Assembly: GCF_902459465.1 (NCBI RefSeq)
Contig: NW_022985698.1
Coordinates: 124,001-188,000, forward strand
DNA from: Asterias rubens
Lineage: Eukaryota
DNA: 64,000 bases
Direction of reading: 5' to 3'
Shown here: positions 41,007 to 41,886 of the stretch, piece by piece
How positions within the stretch are numbered: position 1 is the first letter of the stretch
Layout of the letters: every line of letters begins with the position of its first letter
Made by a program: the position numbers and the translations under genes
The notes under the pieces: generated by a model
The model's database searches: none
Told to the model about the DNA's origin: nothing
Seen by the model: the letters and a program-made list of their open reading frames with translations, nothing else

Positions 41007-41886
41007 AATCTCATATAACTCAGTTCTTGTTCTCATTATGAATAGGGAGACATAGTTGCATTGGGGAGCAACTTGCCATATCTCATATAATCTCATATAA
41101 CTCAGTTCTTGTTTTCCTTATGAATAGGGAGACGTAGTTGCATTGGGGAGCAACTTACCATATCTCATATAATATCATATAACTCAGTTCTTGTTTTCCT
41201 TATGAATAGGGAGACGTAGTTGCATTGGGGAGCAACTTGCCATATCTCATATAATCTCATATAACTCAGTTCTTGTTTGCTTATGAATGGGAGACGTATT
41301 TTGCGCTGGGGAGCATTTTGCCATACCTCATAATCTCATGTAGCTCAGTTCTTGTTTTCCTTATGAATGGGGAGACGTATTTGCACTTGGGAGCAACTTG
41401 CCATACCTCATAATCTCATATAACTCAGTTCTCGTGTTTCTTATGAATAGGGAGACGTAGTTGCATTGGGGAGCAACTTGCCATATCTCATAGAATCCCA
41501 TATAACTCAGTTTTTGTTTCCTTATGAATAGGGAGACGTAGTTGCATTGGGGAGCAACTTGCCATATCTCATATAATCTCATATAACTCAGTTCTTGTTT
41601 TCCTTATGAATAGGGAGACGTAGTTGCATTGGGGAGCAACTTGCCGTATTATCTCATGCAATCTCATATAACTCAGTTCTTGTTTCCTTATGAATGGGGA
41701 AACGTATTTTGCAATGGGGAGCAACTTGCCATACCTCATAATCTCATGTATCTCAGTTCTTGTTTTCCTTGTGAATGGGGAAACGTGTTGCACTTGGAAG
41801 CAGGTTGCCACACCTCATAATCTCATGTAACTCAGTTCTTGTTCTCATTATTAGGGAGACGTAGTTGCATTGGGGAGCAACTTGCC
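41007..41886 (+). repeat. ~81-82 bp tandem array (11 units) made of the intron 3 acceptor plus the start of CYP exon 4
   Basis: Unit ataactcagttcttgttttccttatgaatagggagacgtagttgcattggggagcaacttgccatatctcatataatctc; the last unit is the real exon start. Confidence 0.95.

What the first reader, a model, noticed from the sequence alone, without database searches (positions are those of the whole stretch)
41007..41886. Higher-order tandem array of decoy splice acceptors, each followed by the P450 heme-cysteine codons
Seen: intron 3 of CYP gene 1 ends in 11 units of ~81-82 bp. Each unit is a branch/polypyrimidine region, an acceptor position and the first ~32 nt of exon 4 (encoding G-RRSCIGEQLA). 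Six upstream units keep an intact tAG (exon starts 41046, 41128, 41210, 41451, 41532, 41614; type A). Four have lost it (gaatggg; type B). The order is AAABB-AAABB-A, with a ~405 bp higher-order period (41046, 41451, 41855). Only the last unit runs into the true C-terminus. Splicing to unit 1 gives ...FGIGRHSCIGEQLAISHIISYNSVLVFLMNRET*, which keeps the heme Cys but loses the rest of the C-terminal structure. Established: 3' splice site choice generally favours the first suitable AG after a branch point, and a stop in the last exon escapes EJC-dependent NMD. Inference: the array may be a copy-number-tunable splicing rheostat or null allele for this P450, or it may show how the spliceosome skips six near-perfect decoys. 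The decoys end in gaatAG whereas the real site ends in ttattAG.
Basis: partly seen in the sequence, partly recalled or inferred. Interest (0 to 1): 0.82.

Follow-up and report, generated by a model that had tools for sequence, protein, structure and literature searches.

The report
Silent splice-acceptor minisatellite in P450 intron
The last intron of a sea-star cytochrome P450 gene ends in eleven tandem copies of its own intron/exon junction, but assembled transcripts use only the last, true junction, so this is one more example of the known "mirage" type of minisatellite and not a shown splicing switch.

Summary
There are 11 units of 79-85 bp at about 40997/41007-41886. Six keep the acceptor AG, four have lost it, and the order is AAABB-AAABB-A with a 404-bp higher-order period. 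Each unit carries the first 32 nt of exon 4, which holds the heme-Cys codons. The gene is a complete four-exon CYP2-clan P450.

Transcript contigs from two separate studies (depth 38 and 32.5) join exon 3 directly to 41855. They put nothing on the array, although decoy-spliced mRNA should escape EJC-dependent NMD and still carry the downstream units.

The decoys do not look weak. Their pyrimidine content equals that of the gene's other true acceptors, and no RNA structure masks them. Position next to the exon body, not site strength, best explains the choice.

The structure matches the "mirages" of amphioxus (Adh3, globins, PGBD5, TnC). It mirrors the silent 5' pseudo-sites of the human F7 intron 7 VNTR. 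The scan has found this kind before on other DNA of this genome, and I re-checked one such array myself.

Verdict: a near-neutral intronic minisatellite and a new member of a known kind. The rheostat or null-allele idea is unsupported.

The parts
37200..37548 (+). CYP gene 1, exon 1 (start codon at 37200)
   Evidence: ORF and GT donor. Pfam p450 profile positions 1-75. Contiguous in transcript contigs X1 rec1 and X6 rec14; X9 rec20 covers it only from 37236.
38215..38843 (+). CYP gene 1, exon 2
   Evidence: Pfam p450 positions 87-298, E 1.9e-40. Homologues are CYP2J/2U-like. Transcript contigs cover 38213-38841; the 2-nt offset is alignment ambiguity at the splice junction.
40092..40419 (+). 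CYP gene 1, exon 3. It ends ...PFGIG in phase 1; the donor GT is at 40420.
   Evidence: Pfam p450 positions 299-405, E 4.9e-40. Contigs end this piece at 40416; the 3-nt offset is because TAG is the same at 40417-19 and 41852-54.
40420..41854 (+). Intron 3 (1435 nt); its last ~850 nt are the array
   Evidence: Skipped as one piece in X1 rec1 and X9 rec20.
41007..41886 (+). Minisatellite of 11 units (79-85 bp). Each unit is about 47-50 nt of intron end (branch-point-like TAAC, pyrimidine tract, acceptor position) plus the first 32 nt of exon 4.
   Evidence: TRF; unit table and alignment; unique in the 417.6-Mb genome.
41007..41411 (+). Higher-order block 1: units 1-5 (A A A B B)
   Evidence: TRF period 404, 90% matches; lag-5 identity maximum.
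41412..41818 (+). Higher-order block 2: units 6-10 (A A A B B)
   Evidence: units 4/9 and 5/10 share derived indels and substitutions.
41044..41045 (+). Decoy acceptor AG of unit 1. The other intact decoy AGs are at 41126-27, 41208-09, 41449-50, 41530-31 and 41612-13.
   Evidence: No transcript contig uses them.
41288..41289 (+). Dead acceptor position of unit 4 (TG). Units 5, 9 and 10 have GG, before 41371, 41698 and 41779.
41853..41854 (+). True acceptor AG (unit 11, ttattAG|G)
   Evidence: Transcript contigs of X1 and X9 join exon 3 here and run on without mismatch into unique exon 4 sequence.
41855..42030 (+). CYP gene 1, exon 4 (RRSCIGEQLARMELF... to the stop at 42028-30). The heme-ligand Cys lies in the FGIGRRSCIG motif, which is split by intron 3.
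   Evidence: Pfam p450 positions 408-460. 56% identity to the C-terminus of the Acanthaster planci CYP2-like protein P0051. The 3' UTR is covered by contigs to at least 42182.
44129..47098 (+). Tandem paralogue (CYP gene 2). It has the same intron positions; its intron 3 is about 245 nt and has no array.
   Evidence: tblastn of the gene 1 protein against the window; TRF finds nothing there; sequence read.

Best explanation
This is a 'mirage': an intronic minisatellite born from a tandem duplication of about 80 bp that spanned the intron 3/exon 4 boundary of a CYP2-clan P450 gene. The array then grew by unequal exchange or slippage. First the units diverged into A-type (AG kept) and B-type (AG lost). 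Then a five-unit AAABB block was duplicated. Because the copies were added on the intron side, the unit next to the exon body remains the functional acceptor, and the whole array is removed with the intron. The six intact decoys stay silent mainly because of position and context, not because they are weak. Each is followed by only 32 nt of exon-like sequence and then another intron-like tract, so it cannot be defined as the terminal exon. The last unit is followed by the rest of the coding exon, the 3' UTR and the poly(A) signals. The array therefore has no shown function. It is a near-neutral, probably length-polymorphic, passenger. Shown: the structure, its uniqueness in the genome, use of 41855 in assembled transcripts, and the absence of array sequence from those transcripts. 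Inferred: the way the array arose and the exon-definition reason for the choice of site.
For: Structure and higher-order period. The four exons joined through 41855 tile the Pfam p450 profile from 1 to 460 without a gap, and exon 4 aligns over its whole length with a sea-star homologue. X1 record 1 (1686 nt, depth 38) and X9 record 20 (1730 nt, depth 32.5) come from different studies. They carry exonic differences from the window, so they come from other haplotypes. Both join 40416/19 to 41852/55 and run on into unique exon 4. Depth over 40928-41797 is 0 in both runs. Decoy-spliced mRNA would end in the last exon, so it should escape EJC-dependent NMD and keep all downstream units, and it should therefore be visible. 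In X6 the only array contigs have the same low depth as other intronic contigs (2.4-3.1 against 13.1 for mRNA), after allowing for collapsed A-type copies. This fits pre-mRNA or gDNA. The decoys' pyrimidine fraction is 0.67-0.72 against 0.67 for the true acceptors of exons 2 and 3. There is no stabilising RNA structure (z = +1.57). Edge units 1 and 11 share a variant (CTCATTAT) that the internal units have lost, as expected from homogenisation that spares array ends. The same pattern is described for amphioxus globin mirages. Published mirages and the F7 VNTR likewise leave splicing undisturbed. A second array of the same type exists in this genome at an S18-domain gene.
Against: The RNA evidence is from assembled contigs, which drop rare variants, so a minor share of decoy use (roughly under 5-10%) would go unseen. 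Tissue, stage and exposure state of the samples are unknown, and P450 genes are often inducible. The individuals sequenced for RNA differ from the assembled haplotype, and their array length is unknown; they might carry few or no decoys. The joint table was swamped by a high-copy repeat in intron 2, so junctions are read from the table of contig pieces only. The exon-definition reason is inference and was not tested. The exon-like part of A units is almost identical to the real exon (2/192 differences). This could hint at conversion or constraint, but the differences in the intron-like part are shared between units, so the contrast is not significant when counted as events.
Confidence: 0.78

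Rival explanations
1. Low-level or conditional decoy splicing. In some tissues, stages or alleles, one or more A-type acceptors are used. This would yield a 460-465-aa P450 that keeps the heme Cys but lacks the L-helix and C-terminus, so the array would tune the dose of functional enzyme.
For: Six decoys have branch-point-like TAAC, a pyrimidine tract and YAG|G. They are as good by pyrimidine content as the gene's other true acceptors. The products would end in the last exon and escape EJC-dependent NMD (established knowledge). Contigs cannot exclude minor isoforms (caveat given by the tool).
Against: Array depth is zero in two transcriptome runs in which the mRNA has depth 38 and 32.5. In X6 the array signal matches the pre-mRNA level. 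Published mirages and the F7 pseudo-sites are silent. A truncated P450 without the L-helix is unlikely to fold, so there is no obvious benefit.
Confidence: 0.12
2. The array lowers splicing efficiency without decoy use, for example by soaking up U2AF or U2 snRNP or by promoting retention of intron 3. The assembled haplotype would then be a hypomorphic or null allele.
For: X6 holds intron 3 contigs at about 20% of the mRNA depth. In the DNA run X13 the contig entering the array has a lower depth (70) than the flanking contigs (195-325), so the array may sit on one haplotype only.
Against: X6 shows intron 1 contigs at the same low depth (2.4), so the intronic signal is general, not specific to intron 3. 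Hi-C coverage is uneven by nature (X13 reads as a Hi-C library). The tandem paralogue and the gene's intact reading frame say nothing either way.
Confidence: 0.07
3. Assembly artefact: the array, or its copy number and order, is a mis-assembly of a shorter repeat.
For: No long reads could be laid. For amphioxus BflGb6 the authors note that the draft genome had mis-assembled a mirage.
Against: A-type and B-type 31-mers and a contig running from unique intron through unit 1 into unit 2 are present in a DNA run. Several other DNA runs, including marine metagenomes, hold 38-68% of the intron 3 words. The units differ enough (70-98% identity) for a long-read assembly to order them. There is no N nearby.
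Confidence: 0.03

Closest known systems
[quoted passage not shown] 2002 as cited in PMC3087553; globins BflGb6/BflGb9, PMC3087553; PGBD5 and TnC, PMC3902484)
   Same: The unit spans an exon edge with its splice signal. Many but not all copies keep AG. The authentic junction at the array's end is the one spliced, and mRNA is undisturbed. There is concerted evolution inside the array, with the edge units left out. BflGb6 in particular duplicates the 3' end of an intron plus the 5' part of the next exon, in 3-6 copies of 150-160 bp.
   Different: This one is in an echinoderm, not a cephalochordate. It has 11 units of about 81 bp with a clear five-unit higher-order period. It sits at the heme-binding loop of a P450. 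Length polymorphism and somatic instability, reported for mirages, were not tested here.
Human F7 intron 7 37-bp VNTR with silent 5' pseudo-splice-sites (Borensztajn et al. 2006, PMC1557585)
   Same: It is a minisatellite whose terminal unit contains the authentic exon/intron junction. Five to nine identical sites follow, and they are functional in principle but never used. Only the site next to the exon body is chosen, whatever its strength.
   Different: F7 multiplies the donor (5' site) downstream of the exon, and here the acceptor (3' site) is multiplied upstream of the exon. The F7 rule was shown with 50 minigene constructs; here nothing was tested experimentally.
Intron gain by internal tandem duplication across AG|GT proto-splice sites (Rogers' model as cited in PMC3087553; Hellsten et al. 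2011, PMC3265369, seen by title and abstract only)
   Same: A tandem duplication that copies splice signals within a gene.
   Different: No new intron or exon is created here. All copies stay inside the pre-existing intron.

Membership tests
Mirage minisatellite (tandem duplication of an exon/intron boundary) | Head-to-tail array of minisatellite-size units (published units 10-160 bp) | tested here: met
   TRF: period 82 x 10.9, 87% matches.
Mirage minisatellite (tandem duplication of an exon/intron boundary) | Each unit contains the intron end with the splice signal position plus part of the adjoining exon | tested here: met
   Units align over about 47-50 intronic nt plus 32 exonic nt with the true junction.
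Mirage minisatellite (tandem duplication of an exon/intron boundary) | The terminal unit is the authentic junction, and regular splicing is not disturbed | tested here: met
   Contigs X1 rec1 and X9 rec20 splice 40419 to 41855, and there is no array sequence in these runs. This is contig-level evidence only.
Mirage minisatellite (tandem duplication of an exon/intron boundary) | Concerted evolution inside the array, with edge units excluded from homogenisation | tested here: met
   Units 1 and 11 share CTCATTAT, and internal units share TTTCCTTAT. A units are 88-98% alike.
Mirage minisatellite (tandem duplication of an exon/intron boundary) | Length polymorphism between haplotypes, or somatic instability | not testable with these tools
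Regulated alternative 3' splice site / unproductive splicing switch | Transcripts that use the alternative acceptors are detectable | tested here: not met
   Depth is 0 on 40928-41797 in two transcriptome runs with mRNA depth 38 and 32.5. Minor isoforms are not excluded.
NAGNAG / short-distance tandem acceptors | Competing AGs 3 nt (or a few nt) apart that share one branch point | tested here: not met
   Acceptor positions are 79-85 nt apart, each with its own branch-point-like motif and pyrimidine tract.
Cytochrome P450, CYP2 clan (host gene) | Full-length p450 domain and the heme-binding motif FxxGxRxCxG | tested here: met
   Pfam PF00067 positions 1-460 are tiled by the four exons. FGIGRRSCIG is read directly from the sequence. 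The best named homologues are CYP2J/2U/2A-like.

The most novel reading that the evidence does not exclude
The decoys are not fully silent. In array-carrying animals, under some tissue or induction state, a minor share of transcripts is spliced to an A-type unit, and this share grows with the number of A units. A length-polymorphic minisatellite would then set the output of a xenobiotic-type P450. The locus would also be a natural allelic series for testing how a 3' splice site is chosen among identical complete modules.
Probability: 0.1. Interest if true: 0.6.

Novelty: new member of a known kind. Interest (0 to 1): 0.3.

Why it matters
It adds an echinoderm case, with unusually many intact decoys (six) and a clear higher-order structure, to a phenomenon so far described mainly in amphioxus and in a few human genes. 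Together with the other arrays noted in this genome, it shows that mirages are not peculiar to cephalochordates. It is also a practical warning for gene prediction: acceptor-plus-exon-start copies upstream of the true exon can mislead gene finders into truncated P450 models. As a natural test of 3' splice-site choice it says the same as F7 does for donors: the site next to the exon body wins over equally good copies. No regulatory role is shown.

Tried and rejected
1. Orthologous DNA, to decide whether the 3-nt GAA difference is ancestral and whether the array is species-specific, could not be obtained. The contig of the 77%-identical protein P0001 had no DNA served. Acanthaster P0051 has no gene record. 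A search with the exon 4 ORF found no candidates. An exact-pattern scan of JGI metagenome contigs found nothing.

2. Other copies of the unit in the genome: only the locus itself was found. It is therefore not a dispersed satellite or part of a transposable element.

3. RNA structure masking the decoys: the array folds no better than shuffled sequence (z = +1.57, 18 of 20 shuffles fold at least as well).

4. 'Weak decoys' as the explanation: rejected as sufficient, because the true acceptors of exons 2 and 3 have the same pyrimidine fraction and also carry purines at -6 to -4. No MaxEnt-type score could be computed offline.

5. Constraint or conversion on the exon-like part of A units: 2/192 differences against 41/234 in the intron-like part gives Fisher p = 1.5e-9. 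But the intron-part differences are shared by descent, about 4 substitutions and one indel as events, so the test is inflated and I draw nothing from it.

6. Recursive splicing or micro-exon use of decoys: no donor-like GT follows the decoy AG in a usable context (read from the sequence).

7. The joint table of read laying was filled by a high-copy repeat in intron 2 and 3' of the gene. Junctions had to be read from the table of contig pieces.

8. The Canestro 2002 paper (PMC117041) is not held; it is cited only through PMC3087553.

Full report
**What is there.** The stretch 41007-41887 is a tandem array with period 82 (10.9 copies, 87% matches). It has a second, better-scoring period of 404 (2.2 copies, 90% matches). 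It is by far the strongest tandem repeat in the window, and it occurs once in the 417.6-Mb genome. Cutting it at a fixed anchor gives eleven units of 79-85 bp, the last one truncated. Each unit holds a branch-point-like TAAC, a pyrimidine tract, the acceptor position and 32 nt identical or similar to the start of exon 4.

Units 1, 2, 3, 6, 7 and 8 keep AG before exon-like starts at 41046, 41128, 41210, 41451, 41532 and 41614. Units 4, 5, 9 and 10 have TG or GG there. Unit 11 is the true acceptor at 41855. The order is AAABB-AAABB-A. Mean identity between units peaks at a lag of five units (88.8%), and units 4/9 and 5/10 share derived changes. A five-unit block was therefore duplicated.

**The host gene.** Four exons (37200-37548, 38215-38843, 40092-40419, 41855-42030) give a 493-aa protein. 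Its pieces tile the Pfam p450 profile from position 1 to 460. The best named relatives are CYP2J/2U/2A-like, among them sea-urchin and crown-of-thorns proteins. Exon 4 aligns end to end (56% identity) with the C-terminus of the Acanthaster protein. Intron 3 splits the heme-binding loop (FGIG | RRSCIG). A tandem paralogue at 44129-47098 has the same intron positions and a short intron 3 without any array.

**What the RNA shows.** Runs that hold about the exonic share of the gene's words (0.32) but little or none of intron 3 were taken as transcriptomes. Two contigs from different studies run exon 1-2-3-4 without a break: X1 (1686 nt, depth 38) and X9 (1730 nt, depth 32.5). Both pass from 40416 to 41852 and then on into unique exon 4 sequence and the 3' UTR. 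The 3-nt offset arises because TAG stands at both 40417-19 and 41852-54, so the junction is 40419|41855.

Both runs have depth 0 over 40928-41797. A transcript spliced to a decoy would carry every downstream unit. It would end in the last exon, so EJC-dependent NMD should not remove it. Its absence from the contigs therefore means something, although contigs drop rare variants and a minor share cannot be excluded.

In a third run (X6) the array is represented only at the depth of other intronic contigs: 2.4-3.1 against 13.1 for the mRNA, with the A-type words counted several times over because they are multi-copy. This fits pre-mRNA or genomic DNA. The transcripts differ from the window at three exonic sites (one A>T amino-acid change, two silent). 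They therefore come from other haplotypes, whose array length is unknown.

**Is the array real?** A DNA run has duplicated GATC at GATC sites, which marks it as a Hi-C library and possibly the source animal. It holds A-type and B-type words and a mismatch-free contig running from unique intron through unit 1 into unit 2. Other DNA runs, including marine metagenomes, hold 38-68% of the intron's sampled words. Copy number and unit order remain unverified by long reads.

**Why the decoys are skipped.** They do not look weak. Their pyrimidine fraction over -20 to -3 is 0.67-0.72, against 0.78 for the true site and 0.67 for the true acceptors of exons 2 and 3. Those two acceptors end 'aaacag' and 'ttacag', so they also carry purines just upstream of YAG. 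The array has no RNA structure beyond chance (z = +1.57).

What sets unit 11 apart is its place. It alone is followed by the rest of the exon, the 3' UTR and poly(A) signals (42104, 42111). Each decoy is followed after 32 nt by the next intron-like tract. My best explanation, which is inferred and not tested, is terminal-exon definition favouring the exon-proximal module. The rule 'first AG after the branch point' applies only after a branch point has been chosen.

There is also a survivorship argument, again inference. A duplication across a 3' junction can persist in a working gene only if the last copy is the one used.

**Origin (inferred).** An 80-bp segment spanning the junction was duplicated. 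The first unit's homology to the inter-unit junction reaches about 8-15 nt left of 41007, and short TGC(C) direct repeats stand at both ends of the segment. Units 1 and 11 share a tract variant that the internal units have replaced. This is the usual sign that homogenisation spares array ends. All ten upstream units carry three extra bases (GAA) before TAG. Whether the true site lost them or the first copy gained them cannot be decided without an orthologue. I could not obtain one.

[quoted passage not shown] They are described for Adh3 (Canestro et al. 2002, cited in PMC3087553; the paper itself is not held). They are also described for globin genes BflGb6 and BflGb9 (PMC3087553) and for PGBD5 and TnC (PMC3902484). 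The authors report that many but not all copies keep AG/GT, that regular splicing is not disturbed, that arrays differ in length between haplotypes, and that edge units escape homogenisation. BflGb6 duplicates exactly the same kind of segment, the 3' end of an intron plus the 5' part of the next exon.

The mirror case for donors is the human F7 intron 7 VNTR. There the identical 5' pseudo-sites are functional in minigenes but never compete with the exon-proximal site (PMC1557585). All features of a mirage that I could test are met. Length polymorphism could not be tested.

**Earlier notes of this scan.** After I had reached the mirage reading, the scan's notes showed 15 first-reader notes of amplified splice sites, eight of them listed, in this same genome. 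Two follow-ups had filed such arrays as mirages. One states that their number fits chance in a repeat-rich genome.

I checked one note in part. An S18-domain gene on another contig (L003, G000:C1, about 30929373-30929868) carries 11.8 copies of a 42-bp unit. The unit repeats 'cacag' plus the first bases of the following exon, just upstream of the apparent true junction. I did not test its splicing, nor the claim about chance.

**Verdict.** The array is real and correctly described. It is best read as a near-neutral intronic minisatellite of the known mirage kind. The true acceptor is the one used in all assembled transcripts. The rheostat or null-allele idea has no support but is not excluded at low level (about 0.1). 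Interest is modest: it is a clean echinoderm example with six intact silent decoys, useful as a natural test of acceptor choice and as a warning for gene prediction.

Noticed in passing
window 38857-39245 (intron 2), 42087-42215 (3' of the gene, opposite orientation), and more than a dozen other places, e.g. 6291-6679, 21978-22339, 25069-25459, 30113-30464, 62618-62887: A dispersed repeat of about 390 bp with short inverted ends (MITE-like). It has many copies in the window at 74-91% identity. Its words reach depths of millions in both RNA and DNA runs and swamped the joint table of read laying.
   Followed up: partly
window 44129-47098: A tandem paralogue of the P450 gene on the same strand. 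It has the same four-exon layout, is 37-61% identical per exon, and has a short (~245 nt) intron 3 without repeats.
   Followed up: partly
L003 1859-2354 (G000:C1, about 30929373-30929868): A 42-bp x 11.8 array (95% matches) that repeats an acceptor ('cacag') plus the first bases of the next exon of an S18-domain ribosomal protein gene. It is a second mirage-type array in this genome. Its splicing was not checked here.
   Followed up: partly
window 37743, 38378, 40144, 40313, 41961 (run X13): The DNA run X13 shows 4-base GATC/CGAT insertions at GATC sites. This is the filled-in ligation mark of a Hi-C library, so its depth is uneven and it may come from the assembled animal.
   Followed up: no
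window 37248, 38501, 40202 (RNA runs); 37278-37448, 40097, 40415 (X13): Exonic variants relative to the window. RNA contigs carry A17T plus two silent changes. The DNA run's other haplotype carries D59N and Q328H plus silent changes. The gene is polymorphic but intact on all haplotypes seen.
   Followed up: partly
window 34141-34275 and 19386-19466: Two small minisatellites (29/57-bp units x 4.7/2.4 copies; 42-bp unit x 1.9). The second lies directly after the N run 19245-19384. Neither was examined further.
   Followed up: no
window 39942-39966: A run of 25 A in intron 2; contigs of all runs break there.
   Followed up: no
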